Counted from the first letter of the stretch, positions 1 through 57,767 are shown. The stretch is 64,000 bases of DNA from IMGVR_UViG_3300021338_000003:1-64000, one strand, 5' to 3'. Numbers and translations are program-made. The notes: generated from the sequence alone by a model not told the origin.

Positions 1-804
1 GAAAGAAACGCCAGGCTTCTCACCGGTGTGGTTAGTGAAAATCATCGAGACGTTCTTGCGACCAAGAAGACGCTTGATCTTCCGAAGACCTCGGGAGTGA
101 ACACCCGCCGGTCCAGCCATGTTTTCCTTCTCGGGGTCATCGGCAGTCATCTTAGCGATGAGTGCAGCGGCCGAGTCACAGACGATGAGCATCTGGGGAG
201 GACCACCCTCATCCTGGTCCTCCAGCTCGTTGAGGAGGTACACCAGGTAATTGTAGTAATCGTCCCCATTGTCGTGAGCCTCCATAGTGAAAAGCTCATG
301 CTCGGGGTCAACCCTGTTGGCCAGCATATATCCCTTATCCCAACTTTCCTCAGCATCCCATGCATCAACCGGGATACCTGACTCAAGGGTTGCCGCCATG
401 GTCTGGAAGCAGAGGGTAGTCTTACCAGAATGTTCAGGGCCAAAGTACACCACGAGCTTGCCACCGGGAATGCCTCCTCCAGTCACAAGGTCCAGGTAAT
501 GGGACCCGGTGGTCAAGCAATCGCCAACGAGCTTTGGGCGCAGCTTCCGACGCCGGAAACCGAGCTTCTTCCGAGCCTTCTTCATTCCAGCACTTTCACG
601 GTCGATCTTCGCACCTCGACCCTTGTACTGATCACATGCGGGGGTACCCGTACCGACCCCACGTCCGAGGCGACACGAAATACCCGGAGGCAGGCCGCTC
701 TTCTCAAAGAAGGTATCAATGAACGAACACTGACCGCAGAAATGGTCAGCAAGAACCTTGCGACCGTGTGGGGCTTCGGGTATATCGGTTTTCTTGGCAG
801 GCAT
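1..804 (-). CDS. recA: RecA/UvsX-like recombinase, 3' end truncated by the window edge, with an N-terminal 4-Cys extension
   Basis: Absent from the ORF track because it runs off the edge. Manual translation from ATG 804 gives TGSHYLDLVTGGGIPGGKLVVYFGPEHSGKTTL (RecA P-loop), WDAEES, LIVCDSAAAL (Walker B) and MIFTNH. Confidence 0.92.
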   Translation of the reverse strand, partial: MPAKKTDIPEAPHGRKVLADHFCGQCSFIDTFFEKSGLPPGISCRLGRGVGTGTPACDQYKGRGAKIDRESAGMKKARKKLGFRRRKLRPKLVGDCLTTGSHYLDLVTGGGIPGGKLVVYFGPEHSGKTTLCFQTMAATLESGIPVDAWDAEESWDKGYMLANRVDPEHELFTMEAHDNGDDYYNYLVYLLNELEDQDEGGPPQMLIVCDSAAALIAKMTADDPEKENMAGPAGVHSRGLRKIKRLLGRKNVSMIFTNHTGEKPGVSF

Positions 805-809
805 TGTTG

Positions 810-2597
810 CTATACCTCAATATCAGTGATGGGGGTAACGTTCTCGGCCATACAACCAGTACAATTCACTCTGGATCCAAACCAGTTGCGGCTTTCGGAT
901 AGAGTTTCCTTTCCACACTCAGGACAAAGACCCGGAACGACTCGGCTTTGGAACCCAGAAACGACCCCATCCTCCGAGAAATCGAGGCCGATGTCCCCAT
1001 TCACTCGCTCATTCCTGAAATAGGGCTGGGTCTCGATGTCCTTGGGATAGACGAGGGTATAATATGTCTGGGTCCTATGGTCGAATGGTTCCTTAACCCT
1101 AGACCCTTCCTCGATGACCTTCACCAGGGACTTGAGGTTGGACATCAGGGGCTTGATGTCCGCCATTGTGTCAAAATGACCTCGAAACTTAGATGCCACT
1201 ACCATCTCAGCCCAGGAACTGGAGGACAGGATATTAAGAATAAGTTCACCACGCAGAGTGATTTGGCATGTACTGGGTCCAATCTTCTTCAGCAAACCCT
1301 GACTGAACAGACTTGCCATGACCCGACCAAAATTGGATTGGCGGTCCATGGAATACTCCCGGATAGCCGTCCGCAAAAGGTGACCCTCTGACACATTGGG
1401 ACTGGGCACATACCACTTCTGGACCACAGAAGAAGACTCTACAACAAATTCAGACGCCTTGAACCCTCTTTTGGGAAGGACGTTCTTGTCATCTAGGGTT
1501 GGTTTGGACACGAAGAGCATGCTCTTTGACCCCAATGGCCTCCTCTGACCAGGACCATCCCACAACTTCCACTGGATGGTGCTGCCCTTATTTGCAGACT
1601 CCAAAGCGAGGAGGGCCTGTGACCATACCCACTTGTAAATCACACCCTCGTCAGAGGAGGGATGATCAGCAGGAGTCACAGCAGGGTCTACAGGTTGAAT
1701 GAACAGTGGACCCGGACGCTGAGAGACCCCAGCCGTCTTATATCCCGCGGCCTTCAGAACTTTCTTTCCTCCCCGGATGAATTCTGGATCCATACCATCC
1801 TTAGCCCCCAGTACAGCAGTAATCATCCCACTGCTTTCCAATTTCTGTAGAGCTTTGATTATCCTTGAGCCCGGAAGGCCAACCTCAAGGCAAATATCAT
1901 AAACAAGACTGCCCAGGTTGAGCACAGATGGAGTACTACGACCCGTATCCCACTTGGACACAGTGTCTACAGTCAGAAACCCAGATTCGGCCATCCTCTG
2001 GTATCGTCTAGCAATGCCTTCAGACCCAACACATCCAGACTCCAAAACAACGTCCACTGGACCGCTCAATTTGGTCCGGCATATCCACTCGCATGAGACC
2101 ATCCGTCGACTCTGGAACATTGGCACCGCGGCGATGTGGAGAAGCAACAATTCCCCGACCCCAATGTTCACAGAAGTGCCCAAATATTCGGTAAGAGCCC
2201 GGGAGATATGAAGCCTGGAGAGACCTCGGGCTGCCGTCAGAGCAGTATACTGCTCGATGGCCCCCAGGTCAATGGACTGCTTCTTTCGAAGGGCAGAGTC
2301 CAGACCCTTCTTGTCGGTCACCCTGGAGAGGTCCACCCTGGTACATTTGGCGTCGGGGTGGAACGCCTGCACTTGTTTCTGGATGGCCAGAGATAGAGCC
2401 TCGCCTTCGTTGGTCTGGGGGAACCCCAAGTATACCACGTCTGTGTCCAGATTGGCCAACGTGGATACGGTTCCCGGGTGAAGGGATATCCCCTTTGGAC
2501 CCACCTTCATTCGGTGCTCGGGTAGACAAAGCACCGAATCGTGGATACGACCCAGGAATTCAGCCCGGCTAGGGGACTGCACGAAAATAACGGACAT
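810..2597 (-). CDS. Type IA DNA topoisomerase homolog, predicted catalytically inactive, with C-terminal zinc ribbon
   Basis: Colinear with TopA motifs: IFVQSPSRA (IVESPAKA), VYLGFPQTNEGEAL (IYLATDxDREGEAI), LQKLESSGMITA (AQRLYEAGYITY), IYKWVWSQ, PNVSEGHLL. Ends with CPECG...CTGC. Confidence 0.8.
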   Translation of the reverse strand: MSVIFVQSPSRAEFLGRIHDSVLCLPEHRMKVGPKGISLHPGTVSTLANLDTDVVYLGFPQTNEGEALSLAIQKQVQAFHPDAKCTRVDLSRVTDKKGLDSALRKKQSIDLGAIEQYTALTAARGLSRLHISRALTEYLGTSVNIGVGELLLLHIAAVPMFQSRRMVSCEWICRTKLSGPVDVVLESGCVGSEGIARRYQRMAESGFLTVDTVSKWDTGRSTPSVLNLGSLVYDICLEVGLPGSRIIKALQKLESSGMITAVLGAKDGMDPEFIRGGKKVLKAAGYKTAGVSQRPGPLFIQPVDPAVTPADHPSSDEGVIYKWVWSQALLALESANKGSTIQWKLWDGPGQRRPLGSKSMLFVSKPTLDDKNVLPKRGFKASEFVVESSSVVQKWYVPSPNVSEGHLLRTAIREYSMDRQSNFGRVMASLFSQGLLKKIGPSTCQITLRGELILNILSSSSWAEMVVASKFRGHFDTMADIKPLMSNLKSLVKVIEEGSRVKEPFDHRTQTYYTLVYPKDIETQPYFRNERVNGDIGLDFSEDGVVSGFQSRVVPGLCPECGKETLSESRNWFGSRVNCTGCMAENVTPITDIEV

Positions 2598-2938: not shown

Positions 2939-4237
2939 TCACTCCATCGGCCGACGCTTGCGCCGACGCTTGCGAGGTGCCTCTTCGGAATCAGACTTGG
3001 TCGGAGGGCGCTTGCGCCGACGCTTACGCGGAGGCGGGGCCTCGTCCTCGCCATCAGCAGGAGGACGAGACTTGCGGGTACGAGTCCGAGTCTTGCCTCT
3101 GGCGGACTTGCTACCGGTCTTCTTCGAACGACGGCGACGGCGAGGAGCCTCTTCCTCCTCCTCGTCATCTTCGGAGCCCGTGTCCTTCCAAGCGTTATCG
3201 TTCTCATCCTTGCCTTCATACAACTCACGACGGGGGCGACCGTCGTCGTCATAATACCCAGACCGCTCCATGAACCGACGCATGTTGTCAGGGTCAACGT
3301 CAGCAGCCGCCATCTCTTCCAGAGGAAGAAGACCGGCCTCCTCGATCACCTTCATGCCTACCAGCGCCTTGGGGTTCTCACGACGGAGCTTGAAAATCCC
3401 CATGATATTGGTCTTCTTGCCGTTCTTGAGAATGTAGCGGCCGAAAACCTCTTTTATCTCATCTGAAGTGAGAGGGTGATTTGGAGCGTCATTGCACTTC
3501 TGTACGGAATACATGTCGTCGGCACGACGAGCCGTCTTGTCGAGGCTCATGGTGATGTCAAATCCCTGTTTGGGGTCAGCGGGATCGACACGTTCAAACT
3601 TGGCGATCTTATCGATAGCCTTCATAGGAGTGTAGGGCATTCCAGATTTACCCAGAACACCGAAGTCAGAATTACCCTTGACCACATCCCGGCCGCGGAT
3701 CGTCTTGACGTTGCGCTCGAAGCAGAACCACCAGGTACGCTGATTTGGGCGGGACTTGAAATCATCACACATGGGGCAGCAAAGGCGGTCCAGACGGACG
3801 GCCTTACCATTTTCCATAGCCCGAGGACAGAACCGGTCCTTGTTGCGGTCCGTTCCTCTGGGCACCTCGATCCCCTGTCGCTCCAGGGCGACAGCCTTTA
3901 CGACCTCGGAATCATACCAGCCCTGACCGGTCTTGGGGTTCTTCCAATCAACAACCTTCTCACGGAAGAGGTCGAACTTGGGGCAGAGGAAAGGAACACC
4001 AGGCGGAGCCTTCGGGGGCTTGAACTCCCTGCCCTCGGCGATGGCCTTTTCTCGCATTGACCCGAGCTTGTCAGCGTAGTCGCCGGCTCCCTGAACACAC
4101 CAATGGTTGGCGATGTCCTGGACGGGACCCACAAGCCGGAAACGACGATTCCGGTTATCAGGTACGATGAAGTTGACATCCTCGTCCCAGCGGCTGCGTC
4201 GCTCGCTGCCGCGGTCACTGTAATTGCGCATATTCAA
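2939..4237 (-). CDS. Putative single-stranded DNA-binding protein (T4 gp32-like) with acidic then Arg/Lys-rich tail
   Basis: RRFRLVG...HW, CCPMCD, DPKQGFDITMS and MYSV resemble the gp32 pattern. It lies in the same operon as recA. Confidence 0.6.
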   Translation of the reverse strand: MNMRNYSDRGSERRSRWDEDVNFIVPDNRNRRFRLVGPVQDIANHWCVQGAGDYADKLGSMREKAIAEGREFKPPKAPPGVPFLCPKFDLFREKVVDWKNPKTGQGWYDSEVVKAVALERQGIEVPRGTDRNKDRFCPRAMENGKAVRLDRLCCPMCDDFKSRPNQRTWWFCFERNVKTIRGRDVVKGNSDFGVLGKSGMPYTPMKAIDKIAKFERVDPADPKQGFDITMSLDKTARRADDMYSVQKCNDAPNHPLTSDEIKEVFGRYILKNGKKTNIMGIFKLRRENPKALVGMKVIEEAGLLPLEEMAAADVDPDNMRRFMERSGYYDDDGRPRRELYEGKDENDNAWKDTGSEDDEEEEEAPRRRRRSKKTGSKSARGKTRTRTRKSRPPADGEDEAPPPRKRRRKRPPTKSDSEEAPRKRRRKRRPME

Positions 4238-34376: not shown

Positions 34377-35117
34377 ATGAGCTTGGACAAAACACCTGAC
34401 CTTCCGCCTCTACGGGAACCGAGGAGGGAAGAACTCTCGGACTCGGAGCGGATCGACCAAACCATTCGCGTGCTCAGTGCTGTACGCGGCGAATTGAAAA
34501 GTGTGTCTGTGCAGGTGGCTTCCCTCAATGGGCACATAGCCACCGAGATATCAGCTCTTACTACTTCTATTACGACGTTGAGTAGTCGCATCCGAACCTT
34601 GGAATCACACCGTCAAGACGAAGAAAGAGACAACGAAATACACCAAGCCAAAAGGGAAGCCAAAAGGGAGGGTAGGGATGAGGGGTATATCCAGGCAGCC
34701 CAAGACATTGCTGCCCGTCTCGGCATCAATACCGAGGATGTCTTGGCTATGCGTCAGTCAGATACCTTGGTCCCCAGGGCCCGGGACCATGGACCATCTA
34801 TCCCTACTAACCCTGGAACCGCAACCCCACTATCCGAGAAAAAACCGCACTGGGTCATCCAGGCTGTTGGGACCTTTTTCTCCAATACTATCAGCCTAGC
34901 TGGCACCGAGGGCGGGAAACGTCTGATTGTAGGGGCCGTCGCTTTGGGCCTCGGTCAAGACGCTATTATTACTCTTGGGAAAATCATAGAGAAAATAGAC
35001 CCAACGCCAGCCCAAGTGGTATCGGTTGAAGTTGGCAACCCAGATACAGATGCGGACGCCGACGTTGACATAACCGAAAGTGACGCCGATACAGATGCCG
35101 ATGGGGGACCACGGTGA
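34377..35117 (+). CDS. Coiled-coil membrane protein with acidic DADAD tail
   Basis: Heptad region, hydrophobic LIVGAVALGLG and C-terminal DTDADADVDITESDADTDAD. Confidence 0.6.
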   Translation: MSLDKTPDLPPLREPRREELSDSERIDQTIRVLSAVRGELKSVSVQVASLNGHIATEISALTTSITTLSSRIRTLESHRQDEERDNEIHQAKREAKREGRDEGYIQAAQDIAARLGINTEDVLAMRQSDTLVPRARDHGPSIPTNPGTATPLSEKKPHWVIQAVGTFFSNTISLAGTEGGKRLIVGAVALGLGQDAIITLGKIIEKIDPTPAQVVSVEVGNPDTDADADVDITESDADTDADGGPR

Positions 35118-36286
35118 ACATACTGCGCAAGACGATTCTGGCCAGGTTTGATAGCATACTGCTATACCATGGAACCGACGCCTATAACGTTGAATCCATT
35201 CTCCGTCAAGGCTTGAAACCCCGTGGGTCAGTGGGCAACCTGGGTTGGGACAAGAATACCCTCGTCGACGTGAGAAACAATTCTGTGTTTCTCACAGCTG
35301 ACATCGAAAAGGCCGCTCGATATTCTTTTGGTGAAGAGAAAGACCAGGTACCAGCCATCCTTGAAATTCGCATTTCTGGACGCCATGCCCAAAAACTCAA
35401 GTATGATCCTCTTGACCGTAATGATGCTGCATGGGAAATAGACGATGAGGGCGGAACTGATTTTGAAGCCCTCGTTATACTAGAAGACATTGCTAGTGAT
35501 GCCATACGTAACATCACTGGTCACAAACCCCACTTTTCGGTTAGGGGACTACCTCAATTCCATGAGGTAGAGGATTTGGATGGGGTTAATGTCTACAAGG
35601 TCCTACCTCAAGCCATCCTGAAGGTGCTAGACTCGAACTGGATTACTAGGAAGGATGTGGTTCGGGCTATACAGGATGCACTTAAGAAGTGGGGTAGGGC
35701 CAACAAGAGAACCCCTGGGCAGTACCAGTCAATCAGTATTCACCCATACCTAGACGTGCGAAGAGACGGCACTATCAAAATGTCCAAAGACTGGATGGAA
35801 ACCCGAGAACAATTGTTCTATCAAAAGGGGTTACCCCCAAGTACTATCAAAGGTGTGTGGTTTAGGGAGATTGACTTTCGATCATCTGGTATTAATCAGA
35901 TGAAGGTCGATGAAAAGTCATTCGGGGTCAGACGCCTACCATACGAGGTGGTCGAGGACCATCAGACATCCATAGAAATCACCAACAAAATCATCAGAAA
36001 AGAATATTACACAGTCGACATGCTATATCGGAATTCGGAAGATTTTTTGGTAGTATCCGACCACCTGGAGAATATGGGCCTCGAAAGATGGGAAGAAGTA
36101 GACCATCTTCAGACTCTGACCCGGGAAGAAATCGAGGAGGATTTTGAATCCTTGATAGACACTCTTGCTGAAAGTGCAATCTATATACAGGATGACCTCC
36201 ATAACAGTCACGGAAATGACCCTGCTATTCATGAAGATTTGTGGATTCTCGTAAACCCTAGGGATGCCATGGAGCTTGTGTCATGA
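35114..36286 (+). CDS. ADP-ribosyltransferase-fold protein (KptA/PARP-like clade)
   Basis: LLYHGT...SILRQGLKP...VFLT...A.RYS...AILEI, with a distal EQLFY...LPPSTIK. Confidence 0.65.
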   Translation: MNILRKTILARFDSILLYHGTDAYNVESILRQGLKPRGSVGNLGWDKNTLVDVRNNSVFLTADIEKAARYSFGEEKDQVPAILEIRISGRHAQKLKYDPLDRNDAAWEIDDEGGTDFEALVILEDIASDAIRNITGHKPHFSVRGLPQFHEVEDLDGVNVYKVLPQAILKVLDSNWITRKDVVRAIQDALKKWGRANKRTPGQYQSISIHPYLDVRRDGTIKMSKDWMETREQLFYQKGLPPSTIKGVWFREIDFRSSGINQMKVDEKSFGVRRLPYEVVEDHQTSIEITNKIIRKEYYTVDMLYRNSEDFLVVSDHLENMGLERWEEVDHLQTLTREEIEEDFESLIDTLAESAIYIQDDLHNSHGNDPAIHEDLWILVNPRDAMELVS

Positions 36287-37824: not shown

Positions 37825-38649
37825 ATGTTCGGTGGTGATGATTCGTGGGATGAGGACGATTGGGGCGAGTGGAGCGAGGACGGGGATTCGTCCGGGGCTG
37901 CTTCCGATGACAAGCCGGCTGAGGAGGAGGCCCCCAAGCCTGCTGCTGCCAAGCCGGCAGCCAAGAAGAAGCGGCCCGCCAAGGCCAAGGCGGTTGACAA
38001 GCCCGCTGCGGCCAAGAAGAAGCGGCCCGCCAAGGCCAAGGCGGTTGACAAGCCCGCTGCGGCCAAGAAGGCAGCTGCGGCGAAGAAGGCAGCTGCGGCG
38101 AAGAAGCCAGCCGCTGCCAAGAAGCCTGCGGCCAAGAAGGGTCCGCTGGTTCCGCTGACCTTCTTCAAGGCCGGTGACAACCTCGTTCTCCAGAAGAACG
38201 ACCCCCAGACTGGCGAGGCGCAGAACTTCAACAAGGCGCACTTCAAGAAGGGTGCCCTCAAGGGTCTGATGACGTACGACTTCAAGTCGGTGGGCTATAC
38301 TACGCCCTACGCCCAGATCAAGGAGCTTCGGGCCGCCCTGAAGGAAGCTGGCTACAAGCTCGTTCGTGGCAAGGCTCCAGCTGCTGCGAAGCCGGCCGCT
38401 TCCAAGAAGCCGGCCGCTTCCAAGAAGCCGGCCGCTTCCAAGAAGCCCGCGGCTGCGAAGCCGGCTGCAGCCAAGAAGCCGGCCGTCAAGCTGGCCAACC
38501 GGAAGGCGTACAACACCCTCGTGTCCTCCATCCGGGACAGCCTGGTGATGGTCGGTGCTCGCTTCAGCGAGGACGACGCCCGCAACGCCCTGGACTACTT
38601 CCTGTCGCGCCCCGAGGCGTCCGTCAGAGATGCCTGGGACAAGCGGTGA
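37825..38649 (+). CDS. Histone H1/AlgP-like Lys-Ala-Pro-rich DNA-binding protein with acidic N-terminus
   Basis: KKPAAA repeats in two blocks; N-terminal DDSWDEDDWGEW; AGGAG RBS. Confidence 0.75.
   Translation: MFGGDDSWDEDDWGEWSEDGDSSGAASDDKPAEEEAPKPAAAKPAAKKKRPAKAKAVDKPAAAKKKRPAKAKAVDKPAAAKKAAAAKKAAAAKKPAAAKKPAAKKGPLVPLTFFKAGDNLVLQKNDPQTGEAQNFNKAHFKKGALKGLMTYDFKSVGYTTPYAQIKELRAALKEAGYKLVRGKAPAAAKPAASKKPAASKKPAASKKPAAAKPAAAKKPAVKLANRKAYNTLVSSIRDSLVMVGARFSEDDARNALDYFLSRPEASVRDAWDKR
37960..38061 (+). repeat. 51-bp perfect tandem duplication in the histone-like gene
   Basis: GCCAAGAAGAAGCGGCCCGCCAAGGCCAAGGCGGTTGACAAGCCCGCTGCG twice; an 18-bp unit also occurs three times at about 38389-38442. 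Confidence 0.9.
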
Positions 38650-38789: not shown

Positions 38790-39722
38790 CTAGACGTCCC
38801 GACACTTGATTTTGAGTTGAGCCTCCATCCGTATGCTGCCGCCTTTGGACAGACGGATGTTTCGAGACTCCTCCCACGACTTGCGAACGCTCCTAGCCGC
38901 CTCAGACGGGGGCGTATTGCATTCTAGAACCCTTCTCATCTGGGCTACCAGGTCCTCCCAGTCGTCACCCCATGGCTCATCCTCGATACGCTTGACTGGC
39001 GGAGCATCGAGGGTGGTCACCTTTCCATTCCTAGGGAACTTCTTTCCGGTTTCAGTTCGGAACACCATCTCCGATGTACCACGAGGGTGGGTTTGACCTC
39101 TGACCCGTATATCTCTTCCGGCCGCTTTGAACCCAACGCTCCCGGAGAACATGATTTCTGGGCCCTTAGAAAGGTCAAGAGGGTCCTCGTATTGGGTTAG
39201 GAAGCGGCCGTGGGGTCCGTCGAGTATTTCGACGGGGGCGACAGTCCATGAGCCCTCCCCGGGGCCCTCCGAGACCCAGGTCAGGAGCAGGCCCTCGTGC
39301 TCACCATTTCTGACCAGTATTGGAGTGGTTTGGGAATGGGTAGCCAGGGCAAATTCCTGGGCCAGGACCCCACCCACTCTGATGGTCCTGTTTTGGACTT
39401 TCTGTACTTGGTCAGACATATCCTTGAAATGCTCACAGGATATTGACTCGGCACTTCGATGATTGTCCATGCCATCAATAAGGCCCAAGTCCGAGCATGG
39501 TTTGGACTTCCTGTAGCGACTGAACTTTGTCCAAAATTGGCATTCGCCACAAGTGGCATGGGTCAAGGGGGTGTACTTATCACAGAGGTAGTCAGGGGGT
39601 GTTCCGATGACCTTCTTACCATCTATTTTGACCCTTTTGGATACCTTGCACGTACGACCCCGCACCTTGTGTTGCCACAAAAAACAGGTGGCACAACTTG
39701 GGGGTGGTTGACTGTTTGCCAT
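38790..39722 (-). CDS. Hypothetical protein with two tandem 4-Cys modules
   Basis: CATCFLW...C...CDKY and CGECQFW...C...CEHF. Confidence 0.65.
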   Translation of the reverse strand: MANSQPPPSCATCFLWQHKVRGRTCKVSKRVKIDGKKVIGTPPDYLCDKYTPLTHATCGECQFWTKFSRYRKSKPCSDLGLIDGMDNHRSAESISCEHFKDMSDQVQKVQNRTIRVGGVLAQEFALATHSQTTPILVRNGEHEGLLLTWVSEGPGEGSWTVAPVEILDGPHGRFLTQYEDPLDLSKGPEIMFSGSVGFKAAGRDIRVRGQTHPRGTSEMVFRTETGKKFPRNGKVTTLDAPPVKRIEDEPWGDDWEDLVAQMRRVLECNTPPSEAARSVRKSWEESRNIRLSKGGSIRMEAQLKIKCRDV

Positions 39723-39731
39723 TCGCCCCTG

Positions 39732-40067
39732 TTACTCCTCTGGATCGCCCTCTGGTATGTTGAGGGGCTCGGTTATGAGGTACTCGTCGTAGTCCTCTTC
39801 ATCTTCGTACTCGACCTCATATTCCTCATTGTCTTCAGTGATAGTGGTCATGTACTCGTATACCTCGGGGCTCACGATGCATCGAGTCCAATATGTCCAA
39901 ATTCCGGCCACACCCTCATCCAATTCTGGATCCAGGTAGACGGCTATATTCCCAGTGAATTGAGAGATGGTAGCAATGTTGTGTGCCATGTCCTCAGAAG
40001 GTATGCGGCACACAACAGGGAAGTGGTCGATGAACTCGGGAATTTCCCTCTCTTCATCGGTGCTCAT
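39732..40067 (-). CDS. Small acidic hypothetical protein
   Basis: 111 aa with a GGAG RBS and an E/D/Y-rich tail. Confidence 0.6.
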   Translation of the reverse strand: MSTDEEREIPEFIDHFPVVCRIPSEDMAHNIATISQFTGNIAVYLDPELDEGVAGIWTYWTRCIVSPEVYEYMTTITEDNEEYEVEYEDEEDYDEYLITEPLNIPEGDPEE

Positions 40068-40097: not shown

Positions 40098-41723
40098 CTA
40101 CTTGTCAGACTTCAAACGACGCCTAACAAAGCTTGCGTGCCGGGTCTTGATGCCGGGGGTATCTTCCTGGCGTTCGATTTCAATGGTAGTACCCAGGAGG
40201 GAATCCCGGATCTCCCAGAACTTCTCTCGTTGGGCATCACTGTAGCCTCCACCCACCTGGATTTCAACTCCGTTGTCAAGACGACATTTCAAACCACCCA
40301 GGATATGCTCATATTTGGTCCCTGGGTTCCCGGGGTAGAACCCAACCACCTCAACGTCCACCGTTTCAAACGGCTTAATACGGTGATATCCACTGCGCTT
40401 TCTATTGCGTTCTCCGGCGGCATAAGAGGCGTCGACATCCTTGATGACGATCCCCTCATATCCCTTGTTGCGGGCAACGCCATACAGATGCATGATCTTT
40501 TTGAACCGGTCCTTGGACCCTACCCGACGGGCAGGGGACAATACCAGACTAGGGGCGATATCAGAGGATCCGTCCAGAAGTTCTTCGATCACCGACCTCC
40601 GGTCACCGAAAGCCACATCAGCGACCCCATCTTCAAAGCATTGGAGGTCCCAGATGAAGTCAAACACCATCAGTTGAAGCGGTCTATCTTCCATATCCTG
40701 GGTGGTTTGGGCGGATACGGCGTCCGAGTACTTAGTCGACCCCTTGGCTACGGCTTCGCAGTCCAGAACCCCCATGGTATACCCACCGGCATTCAGAAGG
40801 GCAGCAGCTTCTCTAACCAGATACTGAAGATGGTCCAGTGGCAGGCCCTTTCGGGAATACACTCGACCCAGACCCTGAGTAGAGTCCGTCACCTGCACCA
40901 AGGTGCGCAGACCATCATACTTGGTCTCGATGATGAGCCTCGGGGGGAGTTCGCTCAGAACTCGCTCCAGGTTGATATCCCTCTTGACCGTAGAACACAA
41001 GCTGACGTTGAAGCTTGGAAGGAGGTCCTTCCATACTTTGCGGACATTTCCTTCCTTGAAACCAATCTTGAGGTCTCGCTGTAGGATACGGAACGCCCAT
41101 TTCCTATACTTGACGGTCATCTTTTCGAGGAGCGTCGTGAGCCGGTCCAAATCCCTCTGGTTGGCGGCTGGCTTCTCATTAAGGGCCCGGAGATGGGCTA
41201 CAAACTTGGTCCACGCCTTAAGTGTGTTGGCCTTACTGCCGGATGTTGACCAGTCAATAGTGAACTTAGAGCCTACCCCATACGCCAGGTGCCAATCATA
41301 GGCCAGAACGAAACAATCTTGCAAAATGGGGTTGTCCTTATGGCCCTCGAACACCTCCAACTTCGGCTTAATTTTGGTTCCGATGCCTTCCACCCTTTCG
41401 AGAGCATTGATGGCAGCAGGCAGGAAATGCCGAAGAGCCCGGGGATCGTAGGGGTCAAGCCCCTTGAGGACCTCTTGCTGGGCATGTTCTTTGCGGATCC
41501 TCTTGAGGTCATCAGCCTCCACTTCGGATATCACGTTCTCTCGAAGGTGCTTCAAGACGATGGCCTCTCGGGATACAGGTGGGAATCCTCCATCTTTTCC
41601 CTGTAGAGCGTGACTGAAAACAACATCGATTTCCGCGGCCTTCATCCTATACTTGAGGCCCTTAGTGACGGCGTCATGGGCCTTGGACCGGACCTTGCTG
41701 AGGGTGTTCATTGAGATCTCCAT
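40098..41723 (-). CDS. ATP-dependent DNA ligase
   Basis: Motif I ETKYDGLR, YSRKG, LDCEA, MVFD, EGIVIK, RIKP, OB domain VGGGYSD and RHASF. Confidence 0.93.
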   Translation of the reverse strand: MEISMNTLSKVRSKAHDAVTKGLKYRMKAAEIDVVFSHALQGKDGGFPPVSREAIVLKHLRENVISEVEADDLKRIRKEHAQQEVLKGLDPYDPRALRHFLPAAINALERVEGIGTKIKPKLEVFEGHKDNPILQDCFVLAYDWHLAYGVGSKFTIDWSTSGSKANTLKAWTKFVAHLRALNEKPAANQRDLDRLTTLLEKMTVKYRKWAFRILQRDLKIGFKEGNVRKVWKDLLPSFNVSLCSTVKRDINLERVLSELPPRLIIETKYDGLRTLVQVTDSTQGLGRVYSRKGLPLDHLQYLVREAAALLNAGGYTMGVLDCEAVAKGSTKYSDAVSAQTTQDMEDRPLQLMVFDFIWDLQCFEDGVADVAFGDRRSVIEELLDGSSDIAPSLVLSPARRVGSKDRFKKIMHLYGVARNKGYEGIVIKDVDASYAAGERNRKRSGYHRIKPFETVDVEVVGFYPGNPGTKYEHILGGLKCRLDNGVEIQVGGGYSDAQREKFWEIRDSLLGTTIEIERQEDTPGIKTRHASFVRRRLKSDK

Positions 41724-51729: not shown

Positions 51730-52205
51730 CTACTGATTTCACAAAAACCGGACCCCGAGAATTCAGGGTATATGTCCTGAAGTCGTCGAAGGCCCCTAGG
51801 AGAGAACCAGAGGAATATGGGGCACTCAAGAAGTCTTTGTATAGGGATGGTCGGGTGACCCTATATGTGTGGCTACATGATGGTAAGCCGATCATGTACT
51901 CCCTGGAAGTAAGCCGGGAGCCCACGGCTTCTGTGGATGGCCCTATTTCGGCCGCCATTTTTTTCAGGAAGCACTCCAAGGAGTACAAACGTCGCAAGAT
52001 GTCTGTCATGTTCAGGGATGAATACGTACGGCTGTTGCGGTTTGGGAAGAGCAATTTTGATTATGTGTTCTGTTGTTCCAAGCCCCGGTCCAATCTTCGA
52101 CTGGGCGATAGACGCTTTTCTACCATTGCCAACATTCATCCTATGGAAAAGGAAGTCACTCGTGTCAATGTGACCATACCCAAGAAGGAGCCAAACGATG
52201 GCTAG
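51726..52205 (+). CDS. Hypothetical protein
   Basis: ATGA coupling to the clamp gene. Confidence 0.55.
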   Translation: MTTDFTKTGPREFRVYVLKSSKAPRREPEEYGALKKSLYRDGRVTLYVWLHDGKPIMYSLEVSREPTASVDGPISAAIFFRKHSKEYKRRKMSVMFRDEYVRLLRFGKSNFDYVFCCSKPRSNLRLGDRRFSTIANIHPMEKEVTRVNVTIPKKEPNDG

Positions 52206-52998
52206 CAAGAAGCCGGAGGTATACCGGGATGAAGAGGGTAACCTTATGCGTCCAGAGGAGGTTGCGGGTACGGCCATATGCGGTCGGTGTATATTCTATT
52301 CTGCCCTTCACCCGGCAACCATGGGACCATGCAAGGATACGTTCTCAGTCACCCGCACAACCAGGGCGTGCGTGGACTTTGAAATCGATGTTGACCCGTC
52401 ATACTACCGTCGTATTTCTGCTGTGAAGAAATACAATCTTTTGGCAGGACCTTACCTGGAGCAGCTGGGGGACTTGATCGAAGAGGTTCAAAGCCTGGCC
52501 GGGCGAGTATTCTCTAGGGCCCAAACCAGAGCCGGCAATAAGAGGACCATGGCCCCAGTGTTGGAAGTCCTCAGGAAACACAAGGATACCTCTGCGCTCA
52601 TCCCATTTTTGGAGGAGGTGCAGAGGTACAGGGACCGCGTATCCGAAATTCAAAGTATGGCCATCAATTGGGCTGGGGAGATCGGGGTCATCAGAGAGAA
52701 GGCCGAATCTTACATGTATTCCAAGTTCTCAGAAACCCGTACCGTCAAGCCAGAAGCCATCAGGAAGGCCACTATCTCTTCCGTCCTAGCGGAGCTGCAG
52801 GAAGCCCATGACCGGGTGGATGTTCTCCTCAAACAATGTGATGCTGCCCTGCGCAATTTCTCTGCCCAGCATAACGCTCTCATTGAGATTCAGGTTTCTG
52901 CCCGCACACCGGTAGCAATCCCTAAGGTAGCCTTGTCCGAGTTGAAGGCTGATGATAGTCCCATCCTCCGGGGCAAGAGCAGGAATAGAAACCGGTGA
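52198..52998 (+). CDS. 4-Cys module plus long helical domain (UvsY-like recombination mediator?)
   Basis: CGRCIFY...C...CVDF at the N-terminus; long amphipathic helices at the C-terminus. Confidence 0.5.
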   Translation: MASKKPEVYRDEEGNLMRPEEVAGTAICGRCIFYSALHPATMGPCKDTFSVTRTTRACVDFEIDVDPSYYRRISAVKKYNLLAGPYLEQLGDLIEEVQSLAGRVFSRAQTRAGNKRTMAPVLEVLRKHKDTSALIPFLEEVQRYRDRVSEIQSMAINWAGEIGVIREKAESYMYSKFSETRTVKPEAIRKATISSVLAELQEAHDRVDVLLKQCDAALRNFSAQHNALIEIQVSARTPVAIPKVALSELKADDSPILRGKSRNRNR

Positions 52999-53453
52999 AT
53001 AGGCGCCCTACCATAGACGAACGGTCTTGTCCCGATTGCGGGCAAGCCGTAGACTGGGGAGAAGAAGGAAAAAGTCCGTCTAAACCAACTCTTTGCATGA
53101 GTTGCAATTGGGAAGGACCATTCTATAATACGATACCTCGTCCCCCTAACCCGAAAGATGGCAAGAGGGTGGATGACCTGTATTCTGCGTTCAAGGAAGT
53201 CCTTGAATTCGAAGTGGCATCAGAGAAAGCGTTTGGGAAATTTCAAAACTTCATGGTGTCAAATCCCAATGCCGACAATGATGAAACGTCCCAGAAGATA
53301 TTCAGGGAGTACATAGACAAGGTGGGCCAGATCAAATTCCTCATTAACATCTTGAGTCTGTCCAGTGTGGACCCGGAAGTAGCCAAGCACATCGTCGGTA
53401 ATGAGGTAAACAGGCTATTTCCGAACCTTCCAATGAGGATCGCCAGGCAATGA
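52995..53453 (+). CDS. Zinc-ribbon hypothetical protein
   Basis: CPDCG...CMSC. Confidence 0.55.
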   Translation: MNRRPTIDERSCPDCGQAVDWGEEGKSPSKPTLCMSCNWEGPFYNTIPRPPNPKDGKRVDDLYSAFKEVLEFEVASEKAFGKFQNFMVSNPNADNDETSQKIFREYIDKVGQIKFLINILSLSSVDPEVAKHIVGNEVNRLFPNLPMRIARQ

Positions 53454-54815: not shown

Positions 54816-57767
54816 ATGTTTGAAGACGATCCAAAGCGTAATCTCATTGAGGATGCGCGTGTGTGGATCTCGGGGGTCGAGGTAACCTCCCGCTTGACCT
54901 CGGCTGTCACCATCACCAAGGTAGGAAGGGGTAGCCATAACACTGTTCAGTTCACCCTATCGAACGCTTCGGATGGGTTCGTCCTTAATGAGAGGAACCT
55001 TGATTCCAGCTTGCCTCTGAATGAGCGGTTCTATACTGGTGGCAGTCCAGCCGAGCATGGTGAGAGCATCAAGCTCGCAATGTTCCAGTACAAGAACGAT
55101 GAAACCAGAAATCCAATTGATGAGCAGACCGGAGAGCGACGGTGGCCCCTATCGGTCAACTCGACCATTCTCCACTCCCTGGACACCATCTTTGTGGCGG
55201 AACGTTGGCCCTATAGTCAACAAACCCTCTACTATCCAGCGTTCAAAGGATATGTCGAAACCAAAACCATCTCGGAAAACTTCGTCAATGGACAGTCCAA
55301 CATTACGGTCACTGGCTTTGACATCCGGGCTTTGATATCTCGGATGCGGCTTCAGATGAATTACGTCATCACCAACGCGTTGGCTCCGGTGTCTTTCAAT
55401 TCTGGAGCCACGTCCAATGCTGATACTCTGAATGCCTTCGACCCAGTGGTTCAGGAGGGTATATTCTCGGACCTTCAGAATCCGAGCCAATGGACCACTC
55501 CTGTCGCTGGTCTGTCCCTCAAGGATACCATCGAGTTCTTGGTGACTGGAACCATCACCGAGACCGAAGAGATCCAAATTCCTGGGTATTCTAGCGAAAT
55601 TCGGGACAAAATTCTCTCTACTTCTCGGGAGGAAGTGGCCCGCAGGGGTGTGGGCCGAATGAAGACTGGTATTGTTGTTTCCTATCCCAATGGGGGCGGG
55701 GAGAGTGCCAACGATGTGAGGATTTTGGAGGAATGGCACCGCCTGTGCCTATTCGGGGTACCCGATCAGGGGGACGATCTCGAAGTATCCGACGAGGCTC
55801 AAGATGCGGTGTCGGCTGACCTTCCCGACGAGGATGCCGACACTTTGAATCTCACCCTAGGCCAGCGCCTGTTGTTCTCCACCTCAAGCCGGCCCTGGAC
55901 CCCAGAAGAGACCGAGCGTCACGGCCAAGGAAGCACCTGGGATGGCCCTACAGCCCCTCATGCTATGTCTCTCCATTTCCTATTGCCTTCTACTGGCGGA
56001 GGCATGAATGGGGTCACATCCTTCACGGTGGACCAGGGTTCTGATGAAAGACGTTGGCAGAGCCGGATGTCTATTATAGAGGATTATCTCGACAACCTGG
56101 ACTACCACATCGCGGTGACTGGCGCCGGGGATATGGTCATCGAATTTCCAATGTATGACTTCCAGCCGGACAGGTTTGGTGAATTCGAGGAGGCATTTCG
56201 AGTTCGGCACGATGGGGAAGGAAAGTCCATCACCTTTGATGATGACCGACCCAACGTCCCAGCCTGCATGATCATGACTGCAGGGTACAACCCAGATGTA
56301 GAGAGGATAGGGCAACTTGAGGACGCGGCCGTGGAAGAGGAATTCACCTCGGTGTTGCGAGTCGTCCTCCTGGCCCCTGTCGTGGCGTCCCGTATTGGGA
56401 TGAATATCGAGCGAACGTCCCTGCCGTTTGCATTGGATGACGTTTGCCGTCTCCGTCAATTCGCCGTCTTGCGATTCCAAAGGAAGCTTGCTGAGGCCAA
56501 CAACCTTGCGGTTGACTTGGTTTATCGACCACTCCTGTTCCCAAATCGGCCGCTCCACGAAAGCAAGCGGGACCGGATGGGGTGGATATCCCAGGTGACG
56601 TCCACCGTCCCCCCCTCTCGTATGCACATGGGACACGCCACCATTGGTGCTGTCCTGAAGTACGTCCGAAAGCCGGTTACCTTGGCCAACGGTGACATCG
56701 AATACCGTCTCATCACGGGCTCGAAGACGCTTCCTCTCTCGTACACCGGAGAGGGTCCGGCCATGAACTCGTCCCGGGGTATTCTTATTTCGGACACGAG
56801 CCCTACGGACTTGGACATCACTGCCGACCCGTGTGATGGGTCCACCCGCGGTGCCCCTGCGGTTGACTACTTGTCCTTGGACAATGCCATCGGCTTGGTA
56901 TTTGATGAGAATGCCGCCCAATCTTGCTCTAAGAGTGCCGATGACTTGGCAGCCGACGTTCGGTCTCTGTGGGAGCGTCTCCAGCAGCTGGCGTTGGACG
57001 AGTTGCGCCTGAGGCTGGAGCTTACGTGTACGTTCCGTGACCCAGTGGTGGACACGAACGAGCCGTTTGACCCTGACCTTCACTCCATATATCCTGCCCG
57101 GGCTTTTGACCTTGTGGTGTACCGGTGGGACTTCTCGGCTGGTACCCAGGAGGATTACGAAGCTGTTGGGGCCCTAGGAAAGTCCATCGGTCTACAATGG
57201 GGAGGAGATGCTCCTACTTTCGAGTCGGCTCCCACTATTGCCGATGTGCAGGAAAAGATCTTCGAGCGAGTGAACTTCCACCTATCCAACACCAGCACCC
57301 GGTTCAAGGACGGAGGGTCTGGTACTCCCTACATATATGGCGGAGCGTTCAACAAGCAAGACCCATCCCCTAAGTCCATTGGGGTTGATTGCTCCGGTCT
57401 GATCGTTGACTGCTATGTGTACGCTGGTCTGATGAGCCGGGATACCCGCCCAAACTCAAGCCAGCTTGCTGGTATCTTTCCCTCGACCGACAACCCCAGA
57501 CCCGGGGACATCCTGTTTGTAGGCAAGGGGCGAATCACCCATTGCGTGCTTATTGGTGAAGCTGGGTATCCCTCAGTGGTTGGTGCTTCGGGTGGAACCA
57601 AGGACACAACCACCCTCAAGAAGGCAAGTGACAAGAATGCTCGGGTGAAGACTTTCAGCAATTACGTTCCGGGAATTCGCCCCGAGTCTGAAGTCCAGGG
57701 TTTTGCCACACCCTTCGACAACCTCGTGTCCAGTATTCCCTTCCTAAACCACTTCAGTCTCCCGTGA
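54816..57767 (+). CDS. Baseplate hub-like tail protein fused to peptidoglycan hydrolase domains (M15 and NlpC/P60)
   Basis: N-terminal hub-like beta region (FKGYVET...ITVTGFD). C-terminal M15 motifs TFRD...LH...AFD...LQWGGD...HF, and NlpC/P60 PYIYGG...DCSGL...PGDILF...HCVL. Confidence 0.75.
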   Translation: MFEDDPKRNLIEDARVWISGVEVTSRLTSAVTITKVGRGSHNTVQFTLSNASDGFVLNERNLDSSLPLNERFYTGGSPAEHGESIKLAMFQYKNDETRNPIDEQTGERRWPLSVNSTILHSLDTIFVAERWPYSQQTLYYPAFKGYVETKTISENFVNGQSNITVTGFDIRALISRMRLQMNYVITNALAPVSFNSGATSNADTLNAFDPVVQEGIFSDLQNPSQWTTPVAGLSLKDTIEFLVTGTITETEEIQIPGYSSEIRDKILSTSREEVARRGVGRMKTGIVVSYPNGGGESANDVRILEEWHRLCLFGVPDQGDDLEVSDEAQDAVSADLPDEDADTLNLTLGQRLLFSTSSRPWTPEETERHGQGSTWDGPTAPHAMSLHFLLPSTGGGMNGVTSFTVDQGSDERRWQSRMSIIEDYLDNLDYHIAVTGAGDMVIEFPMYDFQPDRFGEFEEAFRVRHDGEGKSITFDDDRPNVPACMIMTAGYNPDVERIGQLEDAAVEEEFTSVLRVVLLAPVVASRIGMNIERTSLPFALDDVCRLRQFAVLRFQRKLAEANNLAVDLVYRPLLFPNRPLHESKRDRMGWISQVTSTVPPSRMHMGHATIGAVLKYVRKPVTLANGDIEYRLITGSKTLPLSYTGEGPAMNSSRGILISDTSPTDLDITADPCDGSTRGAPAVDYLSLDNAIGLVFDENAAQSCSKSADDLAADVRSLWERLQQLALDELRLRLELTCTFRDPVVDTNEPFDPDLHSIYPARAFDLVVYRWDFSAGTQEDYEAVGALGKSIGLQWGGDAPTFESAPTIADVQEKIFERVNFHLSNTSTRFKDGGSGTPYIYGGAFNKQDPSPKSIGVDCSGLIVDCYVYAGLMSRDTRPNSSQLAGIFPSTDNPRPGDILFVGKGRITHCVLIGEAGYPSVVGASGGTKDTTTLKKASDKNARVKTFSNYVPGIRPESEVQGFATPFDNLVSSIPFLNHFSLP

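What the first reader, a model, noticed from the sequence alone, without database searches (positions are those of the whole stretch)
625..738. Recurring 4-Cys module (C-x2-C-x11-17-C-x12-21-C-x2-[YF]) on RecA and two other DNA-metabolism-linked proteins
Seen: four copies share the layout. They are RecA residues 23-60 (CGQCSF...C...CDQY), the 52198 ORF (CGRCIF...C...CVDF, nt 52279-52380) and two tandem copies in the 38790-39722 ORF (CATCFL...C...CDKY and CGECQF...C...CEHF, nt 39426-39695). Known: canonical RecA and UvsX have no such domain, and the spacing with flanking aromatic residues resembles HiPIP-type [4Fe-4S] ligation. Inference: a phage-specific Fe-S or Zn tag that could mediate assembly or redox sensing among recombination proteins.
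Basis: partly seen in the sequence, partly recalled or inferred. Interest (0 to 1): 0.72.

Follow-up and report, generated by a model that had tools for sequence, protein, structure and literature searches.

The report
HiPIP-like four-cysteine module on phage RecA
A rare marine jumbo phage puts the same small four-cysteine metal-binding domain, laid out like the iron-sulfur core of HiPIP proteins, at the start of its RecA recombinase and of two other replication/repair-linked proteins. This architecture is not described for RecA, and which metal it binds is untested.

Summary
The 250.8-kb seawater phage genome holds four copies of C-x2-C-x11-17-C-x12-21-C-x2-[YF] and no others. They sit at the N-termini of RecA, of a protein downstream of the ATP-dependent DNA ligase (two tandem copies), and of a protein in the helicase/DnaB/FEN operon.

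The regex alone is barely above chance; the comparative evidence decides it. All 8 RecA orthologs of this clade (36-57% identity) keep the four cysteines. The one related large phage genome found (G001, 31-37% protein identity) has orthologs of all three proteins, with all 16 cysteines conserved and again exactly four copies.

Profile comparison links the RecA, p52 and p38b modules. The p38a copy is only weakly linked. A 14-module profile aligns collinearly with genuine HiPIPs (HHalign probability 68%, P 4.7e-5), while Zn-ribbon controls score at noise. Pfam and ESM Atlas hits also point to HiPIP and to the HiPIP-like small subunit of 4-hydroxyphenylacetate decarboxylase, but all are sub-threshold.

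Best reading: a mini-HiPIP-like [4Fe-4S] domain (about 0.5), with a Zn(Cys)4 finger as the main rival. Its function (docking, stability or redox/iron dependence) is inferred only. It is a new variant of a known kind.

The parts
1..804 (-). 5' part of the RecA gene (residues 1-268 of 462); the rest lies at the end of the circular contig
   Evidence: Pfam RecA PF00154 E 3e-18 over residues 95-268; PHROG UvsX-like recombinase; full-length P0002; 136-bp end overlap
625..738 (-). RecA N-terminal 4-Cys module (residues 23-60, CGQCSF...C...CDQY)
   Evidence: conserved in all 8 RecA orthologs of the clade
38790..39722 (-). p38 gene (310 aa): two tandem modules followed by a C-terminal domain of unknown function, last gene of the DNA ligase operon
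   Evidence: ortholog in G001 at 37% identity over residues 4-210, also next to the ligase. Database gene calls start at residue 116, but the N-terminal region is conserved in frame.
39573..39695 (-). p38 module a (residues 10-50, CATCFLW...C...GTPPDYLCDKY), the most divergent copy, strongly basic (+7)
   Evidence: HHalign link to the other copies is weak
39426..39551 (-). p38 module b (residues 58-99, CGECQFW...PC...CEHF)
   Evidence: Pfam HiPIP E 0.012-0.045; HHalign to p52 P 6e-4 and to RecA-N P 8e-4 to 1.5e-3
52198..52998 (+). p52 gene (266 aa): N-terminal module followed by a long helical/coiled-coil part, function unknown
   Evidence: ortholog in G001 at 31% identity
52279..52380 (+). 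p52 module (residues 28-61, CGRCIFY...GPC...ACVDF)
   Evidence: A profile of RecA orthologs from other phages ranks it second of 4,788 ORFs, E 0.002. HHalign to RecA-N gives probability 71%, P 3.7e-5. Its ESMFold model matches HiPIP (TM 0.60) and the HPAD small subunit (TM 0.65).
40098..41723 (-). ATP-dependent DNA ligase, first gene of the operon that ends with p38
   Evidence: Pfam DNA_ligase_A_M, OB_2 and A_N; same adjacency in G001
39732..40067 (-). small acidic protein between the ligase and p38; its stop lies 9 nt before the p38 start codon
45941..51729 (+). replication gene run upstream of p52: SF2 helicase, DnaB-like helicase, 5'-3' exonuclease/FEN, putative sliding clamp
   Evidence: Pfam and PHROG hits; the clamp call is weak (E 0.0026)
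52995..53453 (+). Zn-ribbon protein whose start overlaps the p52 stop; a conserved neighbour in G001; used as negative control
810..2597 (-). 595-aa gene immediately upstream of RecA, in the position held by type IA topoisomerase in relatives
   Evidence: no Pfam hit for the window's own protein

Best explanation
The module is a genuine, independently folding metal-binding domain of about 40 residues. A rare lineage of marine jumbo phages has duplicated it and fused it to the N-termini of three DNA-transaction proteins: RecA, a ligase-operon protein (twice in tandem) and a replisome-operon protein.

Its four invariant cysteines, the aromatic residue two positions after Cys2 and the aromatic three positions after Cys4 are collinear with the cluster-binding core of high-potential iron-sulfur proteins. 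The most likely cofactor is therefore one cubane [4Fe-4S] cluster per module, held as in the mini-HiPIP small subunits of glycyl-radical enzymes (HPAD gamma, BSS beta and gamma). There the cluster domain has a structural and docking role rather than carrying electrons.

Inferred mechanism: the cluster staples a small N-terminal knob. In RecA the knob precedes the polymerisation helix, so it would be displayed once per protomer on the filament. The knob is needed for stability and/or for docking to a shared partner or to DNA. This would make recombination, ligation-linked and replication-linked functions depend on the host's Fe-S supply and redox state.

Shown: existence, conservation, copy number, context, and the HiPIP-like layout. 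Inferred: the metal, the fold and the role.
For: - Four copies at exact coordinates and no others in the genome.
- 8 of 8 RecA orthologs at 36-57% identity keep all four Cys. More distant RecAs lack the module.
- The second phage G001 has orthologs of RecA, p52 and p38 with 16 of 16 Cys conserved, the same ligase adjacency and exactly four copies.
- A profile built only from foreign RecA orthologs ranks p52 second of 4,788 ORFs, E 0.002.
- HHalign between copies: RecA-N to p52 probability 71%, P 3.7e-5; p52 to p38b P 6e-4; RecA-N to p38b P 1.5e-3. Each beats 100 of 100 column shuffles.
- Two unrelated Zn-ribbon domains of the same phages score at noise, probability at most 2.4%.
- Against 67 Pfam-verified HiPIPs the 12-module profile gives probability 43%, P 2.5e-4, with 0 of 100 shuffles reaching it and all four Cys in register. 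With 14 modules it gives probability 68%, P 4.7e-5.
- HiPIP PF01355 is the only recurrent Pfam hit.
- ESM Atlas: p38 residues 1-112 by features, and the p52 module by predicted structure, reach the same cluster of HPAD small subunits (PF18524 HPIP_like). p52 also matches a HiPIP cluster at TM 0.60.
- HPAD gamma carries two tandem [4Fe-4S] sites in about 90 aa, like the p38 N-terminus, and GRE small subunits are HiPIP-like (PMC13450708).
- Established knowledge: Zn fingers of DNA-metabolism proteins are typically two CxxC knuckles, not one knuckle plus two isolated Cys.
Against: - No match to HiPIP or HPIP_like reaches a curated threshold. Only 2 of 12 modules hit HiPIP, at E 0.045-0.17.
- The HMM profiles find no HiPIP in the PDB sequences.
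- The profile gives only noise in 5 bacterial genomes that encode HiPIP.
- The RecA module alone scores poorly against HiPIP (probability 1-7%) and has no Atlas match.
- AlphaFold2 did not produce a confident fold (pLDDT 37 and 47), so no structural search on a model of my own was possible.
- The modules lack the N-terminal half of true HiPIPs.
- The phage comes from seawater, where iron is scarce and exposed clusters would meet oxygen.
- The phages encode no IscA or IscU scaffold.
- No experiment bears on the metal or on the function.
Confidence: 0.5

Rival explanations
1. The module is a structural Zn(Cys)4 finger, not an Fe-S site. It would act as a small protein-protein or protein-DNA interaction domain, like the N-terminal C4 finger of RadA/Sms or the zinc-binding domain of T7 gp4.
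For: - Cys4 sites on DNA-metabolism proteins are mostly zinc sites (established knowledge).
- No HiPIP match passes a curated cut-off.
- PDB sequence searches return only zinc-finger or rubredoxin-type noise.
- The habitat is iron-poor, oxic seawater.
- The phages encode no Fe-S assembly genes.
- p38a is strongly basic, as DNA-binding fingers are.
Against: - One CxxC knuckle plus two isolated Cys, 11-17 and 12-21 residues apart, is not the usual two-knuckle zinc geometry.
- The layout is collinear with HiPIP, including both aromatic positions.
- Genuine Zn-ribbon domains from the same phages do not resemble the module.
- Atlas hits converge on Fe-S families.
Confidence: 0.33
2. The four copies are not one domain family. 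They would be independent cysteine clusters that fit a pattern chosen after the fact.
For: - The regex is only marginally above shuffled expectation.
- Leave-one-out HMMs fail.
- Pairwise identity is 10-22%.
- p38a versus p52 is at noise: 56 of 100 shuffles score as well.
Against: - Once orthologs are added, RecA-N, p52 and p38b are linked by HHalign at P 4e-5 to 1.5e-3, and 0 of 100 shuffles reach those scores.
- A foreign RecA profile picks p52 as the best non-RecA ORF.
- All copies are N-terminal.
- The copy number and every Cys are conserved between two phages at 31-37% identity.
- MAFFT aligns all 12-14 modules with the four Cys in invariant columns.
Confidence: 0.1
3. The two p38 copies are not translated. 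The real gene would start at the GTG at residue 116, as database gene callers have it, leaving only two real copies.
For: Both database gene calls (P0001, 195 aa; P0153, 227 aa) start downstream of the modules.
Against: - The upstream 115 codons are open and are conserved in frame in G001, including 8 of 8 Cys and the GTPPDYLC block.
- The long ORF starts 9 nt after the upstream stop in the window and overlaps the ligase gene end in G001.
- Gene callers also cut the module off two RecA orthologs, where the DNA clearly encodes it.
Confidence: 0.05

Closest known systems
High-potential iron-sulfur proteins (HiPIP, Pfam PF01355)
   Same: Same order and similar spacing of the four ligands: HiPIP has C-x2-C, then 11-14 residues to Cys3, then 13 to Cys4; RecA and p52 modules have 12 residues between Cys3 and Cys4. 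An aromatic sits two residues after Cys2 and three after Cys4, and Gly/Pro precedes Cys3. HHalign gives probability 68%, P 4.7e-5, with all four Cys in register.
   Different: The modules are cytoplasmic N-terminal domains of larger proteins, not free TAT-exported periplasmic electron carriers. They lack the N-terminal half of the HiPIP fold. No Pfam match passes the 22-bit cut-off.
HiPIP-like small subunits of glycyl-radical enzymes (HPAD gamma, PF18524 HPIP_like plus PF18671; BSS beta and gamma; MASS beta and gamma)
   Same: Cytoplasmic mini-HiPIP [4Fe-4S] modules of about 40 residues that serve as structural or docking parts of larger assemblies. HPAD gamma has two cluster sites in tandem within about 90 aa, like the p38 N-terminus (PMC13450708). 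They are the top ESM Atlas hit for p38 by features and a structural neighbour of the p52 module.
   Different: Those are separate subunits of anaerobic radical enzymes, not domains fused to DNA enzymes. There is no detectable HMM match to PF18524. One HPAD gamma site uses His plus 3 Cys.
RadA/Sms (RecA-family ATPase with an N-terminal C4 zinc finger)
   Same: A RecA-fold recombination ATPase that carries a small 4-Cys metal domain at its N-terminus (established knowledge).
   Different: The RadA/Sms finger is a two-knuckle CxxC...CxxC zinc ribbon, followed by a KNRFG motif and a Lon-like domain. The phage protein is a true RecA (PF00154) with a single-knuckle, HiPIP-like layout.
Fe-S clusters of DNA replication and repair enzymes (AddB, Dna2, XPD/DinG, primase, EndoIII/MutY)
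   Same: A [4Fe-4S] cluster used as a structural, DNA-positioning or redox-sensitive element in DNA-processing proteins (PMC3378879, listed; established knowledge).
   Different: Their ligand spacings and folds differ: C-x6-C-x2-C-x5-C, or C...C-x2-C-x5-C. None is HiPIP-like, and none is known on a RecA/UvsX recombinase.

Membership tests
RecA (PF00154), for the host protein | RecA ATPase core with Walker A/B, scoring above Pfam's gathering cut-off | tested here: met
   66.7 bits against a 27-bit cut-off over residues 95-268; GPEHSGKTT Walker A is present; 7,484 relatives at E up to 0.001
HiPIP (PF01355) | Sequence match at or above the curated 22-bit cut-off | tested here: not met
   Best 16.3 bits for whole p38; 14.5 bits (p38b) and 12.7 bits (p52) for single modules; none for RecA-N or p38a; no genome-level hit
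HiPIP (PF01355) | Four Cys ligands in the order and spacing C-x2-C...C...C, with aromatic residues flanking Cys2 and Cys4 | tested here: met
   HHalign against 67 verified HiPIPs aligns all four Cys and both aromatic positions; probability 43-68%, P 2.5e-4 to 4.7e-5; 0 of 100 shuffles reach it; Zn-ribbon controls are at noise
HiPIP (PF01355) | HiPIP fold | tested here: inconclusive
   The Atlas ESMFold model of the p52 module matches a HiPIP cluster at TM 0.60 over 41 residues and the HPAD small subunit at TM 0.65, but short-stretch TM scores mean little. My AlphaFold2 models had pLDDT 37 and 47. The RecA module had no match.
HiPIP (PF01355) | Binds a [4Fe-4S] cluster cycling between 3+ and 2+ at high potential | not testable with these tools
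   Needs UV-vis, EPR, Mössbauer and voltammetry. The ligand co-folding job was not run by the tool.
HiPIP (PF01355) | Free soluble periplasmic electron carrier with a TAT signal | tested here: not met
   The reference HiPIPs carry TAT signals. The phage modules are N-terminal domains of cytoplasmic DNA proteins with no signal peptide visible in the sequence.
HPIP_like (PF18524, HPAD gamma C-terminal domain) | Sequence match at or above the 28.1-bit cut-off | tested here: not met
   No hit at E up to 10 in hmmscan of the modules or in the genome. The only links are an ESM feature similarity of 0.89 and a structural TM of 0.65.
Zinc ribbon / two-knuckle C4 zinc finger (RadA/Sms, RecR, topoisomerase IA type) | Two CxxC (or CxxH) knuckles | tested here: not met
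   Only the first pair is CxxC; Cys3 and Cys4 are isolated in all 14 modules. HHalign to two real Zn-ribbon domains of the same phages gives probability at most 2.4%.

The most novel reading that the evidence does not exclude
A RecA-family recombinase that carries one HiPIP-like [4Fe-4S] cluster per protomer. The same cluster module would sit on ligase-associated and replisome-associated proteins, forming a phage-encoded network. Through it, recombination, nick sealing and replication would be jointly gated by redox state or iron supply, or coordinated by docking of the shared module on a common hub. This would be the first Fe-S recombinase.
Probability: 0.15. Interest if true: 0.85.

Novelty: new variant of a known kind. 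Interest (0 to 1): 0.62.

Why it matters
Fe-S clusters are known on helicases, nucleases, primases, polymerases and glycosylases. I know of none on a RecA/Rad51/UvsX recombinase, and two literature searches found none. A HiPIP-type module has so far been seen outside electron transport only in the small subunits of glycyl-radical enzymes.

If the module binds a cluster, these phages offer a small, separable domain for asking what Fe-S cofactors do on DNA enzymes. It is about 40 residues long and appears in three protein contexts. It would also be a case of a marine virus spending scarce iron on its replication and recombination proteins.

The practical lesson holds even if the metal is zinc. 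Gene callers cut this domain off in 4 database entries (P0001, P0153, P0007, P0008), so it is under-represented in protein databases.

Tried and rejected
- AlphaFold2 on p38 residues 1-115 (single sequence) and on RecA-N with 6 orthologs gave pLDDT 37 and 47. The models were unusable, so I ran no fold search.
- Complex prediction with the 12-module alignment plus a 4Fe-4S ligand was not folded by the tool. It gave no verdict and is no evidence either way.
- PDB sequence searches with profiles A5 and A7 and with the p38 N-terminus returned nothing or noise.
- Searches for further relatives of p38 and p52 found only G000 and G001. I searched the 5.8-billion-protein index, IMG/VR, JGI metagenome contigs and GenBank phages.
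- The RecA scan of genome contigs found nothing.
- The Pfam HiPIP and HPIP_like models found nothing in the genome DNA.
- PF18524 was not found in the 401 Pseudomonadota genomes searched, so no HPAD gamma sequences were available for a profile comparison.
- Profile A7 gave only noise in 5 HiPIP-bearing bacterial genomes.
- Neither phage encodes IscA or IscU.
- Read laying on p38 showed no variants in three seawater runs, so there was no population test of coding or selection.
- Net charge does not support a uniform DNA-binding role: RecA modules are near neutral and only p38a is strongly basic.
- A leave-one-out HMM built from the four window copies alone failed. The link between copies appeared only after orthologs were added.

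Full report
**Setting.** The window is the first 64 kb of a 250,817-bp IMG/VR virus record (G000, CheckV completeness 91%). Its ends overlap by 136 bp with one mismatch, so the record is a circular or permuted assembly. The RecA gene that runs off the window start continues at the contig end. The full protein is P0002, 462 aa. The DNA occurs in seawater metagenomes. The phage is an orphan: GenBank phages match only the RecA core, at about 30% identity, and they do not match p38 at all.

**Observation.**
- RecA residues 23-60 (nt 625-738, minus strand).
- p52 residues 28-61 (nt 52279-52380).
- p38 residues 10-50 and 58-99 (nt 39426-39695, minus strand).

A regex over every six-frame ORF of the whole genome finds no other copy in a real gene. 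HMMs built from the copies find none either.

The pattern alone is weak evidence. The loose regex gives 6 six-frame hits against 2.8 expected from residue shuffles, and the tighter version gives 4 against 0.6. The copies are 10-22% identical. Leave-one-protein-out HMMs built from the window's copies do not retrieve the omitted protein.

**Comparative evidence.** An exhaustive phmmer search of 1.84 billion representatives with full-length RecA found a small clade of close relatives (P0003-P0008, 35-57% identity).
- P0003-P0006 carry the complete module, with all four Cys.
- P0007 and P0008 looked truncated. The DNA of their contigs shows the module in frame upstream of the called start.
- With the RecA of a related IMG/VR phage (below), 8 of 8 clade members have the module.
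- None of the remaining top-150 RecAs has it in its first 140 residues.
- The conserved gene order in the relatives is type IA topoisomerase, then RecA, then an Mre11-like phosphoesterase.

A profile scan of IMG/VR found one related large genome, G001 (IMGVR_UViG_3300009285_003054, 176.8 kb). It encodes orthologs of all three module-bearing proteins:
- RecA: L007:2971-4374.
- p52: L025:1444-2217, 31% identity.
- p38: L026:1144-2172, 37% identity, again directly downstream of the ATP-dependent ligase.

Every one of the 16 module cysteines is conserved, while overall identity is about one third. A profile of all modules finds exactly four copies in each genome.

This also settles a doubt about p38. 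Database gene calls start it at residue 116 (P0001, P0153). But the upstream 115 codons are open, conserved in frame (including a GTPPDYLC block), and packed against the upstream gene.

**Are the copies one family?** With orthologs added, HHalign links three of the four groups:
- RecA-N and p52: probability 71%, P 3.7e-5, 39 columns spanning all four Cys.
- p52 and p38b: P 6e-4.
- RecA-N and p38b: P 1.5e-3.

None of 100 column shuffles reaches any of these scores. A profile made only from foreign RecA orthologs ranks p52 as the second-best of 4,788 ORFs in this genome (E 0.002). Two unrelated 4-Cys Zn-ribbon domains from the same phages score at noise against every module group (probability at most 2.4%). 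The module is therefore not a generic CxxC finger. The p38a copy has a longer second loop and is strongly basic. It is only weakly linked to the others (2-3 of 100 shuffles do as well against RecA-N and p38b, and it is at noise against p52). Its membership rests on layout, position and tandem arrangement. MAFFT places the four Cys of all 12-14 modules in invariant columns.

**What is it like?** Several independent tests point to HiPIP, none of them significant alone:
- HiPIP (PF01355) is the only recurrent Pfam hit, but always below threshold: E 0.012-0.17, 2 of 12 modules.
- I fetched 67 genuine HiPIPs from bacterial genomes by a DNA pattern and verified a sample of four with Pfam at 52-87 bits.
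- HHalign of the 12-module profile against them gives probability 43%, P 2.5e-4, with 0 of 100 shuffles as good. With greedy extension all four Cys, the aromatic after Cys2 and the aromatic after Cys4 are in register.
- Adding the two newly recovered RecA modules raises this to probability 68%, P 4.7e-5.
- In the ESM Atlas, p38 residues 1-112 are nearest by features (0.89, 187 of 256 shared) to the small subunit of 4-hydroxyphenylacetate decarboxylase (PF18524 HPIP_like plus PF18671).
- The Atlas model of the p52 module matches that same cluster by structure (TM 0.65) and a HiPIP cluster (TM 0.60).
[quoted passage not shown] That parallels the tandem pair in p38.

Against the HiPIP reading:
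- No curated threshold is met.
- Plain HMMs do not find HiPIPs in the PDB sequences or in HiPIP-bearing genomes.
- The RecA module alone is unconvincing.
- AlphaFold2 failed.
- The co-folding tool did not run the ligand job.

**Context.** p38 closes an operon made of the ATP-dependent DNA ligase, a small acidic protein and p38. p52 lies in a run of SF2 helicase, DnaB-like helicase, FEN-type exonuclease and a putative clamp. It is followed by a Zn-ribbon protein with overlapping stop and start, a pairing conserved in G001. In RecA the module precedes the stretch that aligns positionally with the bacterial N-terminal polymerisation helix. Pfam's RecA match starts at residue 95, which is profile position 31. 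The module is thus an add-on to a complete RecA, not a replacement; this last step is my inference.

**Explanation and rivals.**
- I commit to a mini-HiPIP-like [4Fe-4S] domain (0.5). It would serve as a cluster-stapled N-terminal knob for stability and/or docking, and would tie three DNA-transaction proteins to Fe-S supply and redox state. The existence, conservation and layout are shown. The metal, the fold and the role are inferred.
- The main rival is a Zn(Cys)4 finger (0.33). It is favoured by precedent on DNA enzymes and by the iron-poor habitat. It is disfavoured by the single-knuckle geometry, the HiPIP collinearity and the Zn-ribbon controls.
- Non-homology of the copies (0.1) and non-translation of the p38 N-terminus (0.05) are largely excluded by the G001 comparison.

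**Novelty and verdict.** I found no description of a RecA/UvsX recombinase with such a domain. The architecture is a new variant of known kinds: a HiPIP-like or C4 metal domain on one side and RecA on the other. It is restricted, as far as the databases show, to a rare marine jumbo-phage lineage. Interest is 0.62: real, conserved and unexpected on RecA, but the metal and the function need bench work.

Noticed in passing
window 1-136 and G000 contig end (250682-250817): The first 136 bases of the record repeat at its end with one mismatch (G/A at position 10). The 'linear' IMG/VR record is therefore a circular or circularly permuted assembly of about 250.7 kb, and RecA spans the junction.
   Followed up: yes
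window 39378-39722 (-); L026; L151:9866-10000; L152:6135-6479: Automatic gene calls cut the Cys-rich N-terminal module off p38 in both phages (P0001, P0153) and off two RecA orthologs (P0007, P0008). The domain is therefore systematically under-represented in protein databases.
   Followed up: yes
window 810-2597 (-): The 595-aa gene just upstream of RecA sits where relatives have a Toprim/Topoisom_bac type IA topoisomerase, yet it has no Pfam or PHROG hit. It ends in a CxxC...CxxC zinc ribbon. It may be a very divergent topoisomerase or a replacement.
   Followed up: partly
window 2939-4237 (-): A 432-aa protein with an internal Cys cluster (C-x17-CC-x2-C) and a long tail of alternating acidic and basic residues. 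It is conserved next to the RecA block in G001 (L007:15-872). No family hit; possibly an ssDNA-binding protein.
   Followed up: no
window 37825-38649 (+): A 274-aa protein with long PAAAKK/AKKPAA repeats resembling histone H1 or AlgP-type basic repeats, facing the ligase-p38 operon. No Pfam hit.
   Followed up: no
window 35114-36286 (+): A 390-aa protein with a weak, sub-threshold match to the PARP catalytic domain (E 3e-4, 20.8 bits against a 26.7-bit cut-off). It is a possible ADP-ribosyltransferase.
   Followed up: no
window 52995-53453 (+) and L025:926-1444 (-): A Zn-ribbon protein whose start codon overlaps the p52 stop codon. The pairing is conserved in G001, which suggests translational coupling and a functional pair with p52.
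   Followed up: partly
window 54816-57767 (+): A 983-aa protein with a C-terminal NlpC/P60 peptidase domain and a minor-tail PHROG hit lies directly after the replication gene run. It is probably a virion-associated cell-wall hydrolase.
   Followed up: no
RecA orthologs, residues just before the module (A2 columns 20-28): A short PHGR[KP] motif 8-18 residues upstream of Cys1 is conserved in 6 of the 8 RecA orthologs. It is absent from p52 and p38, and its meaning is unknown.
   Followed up: no
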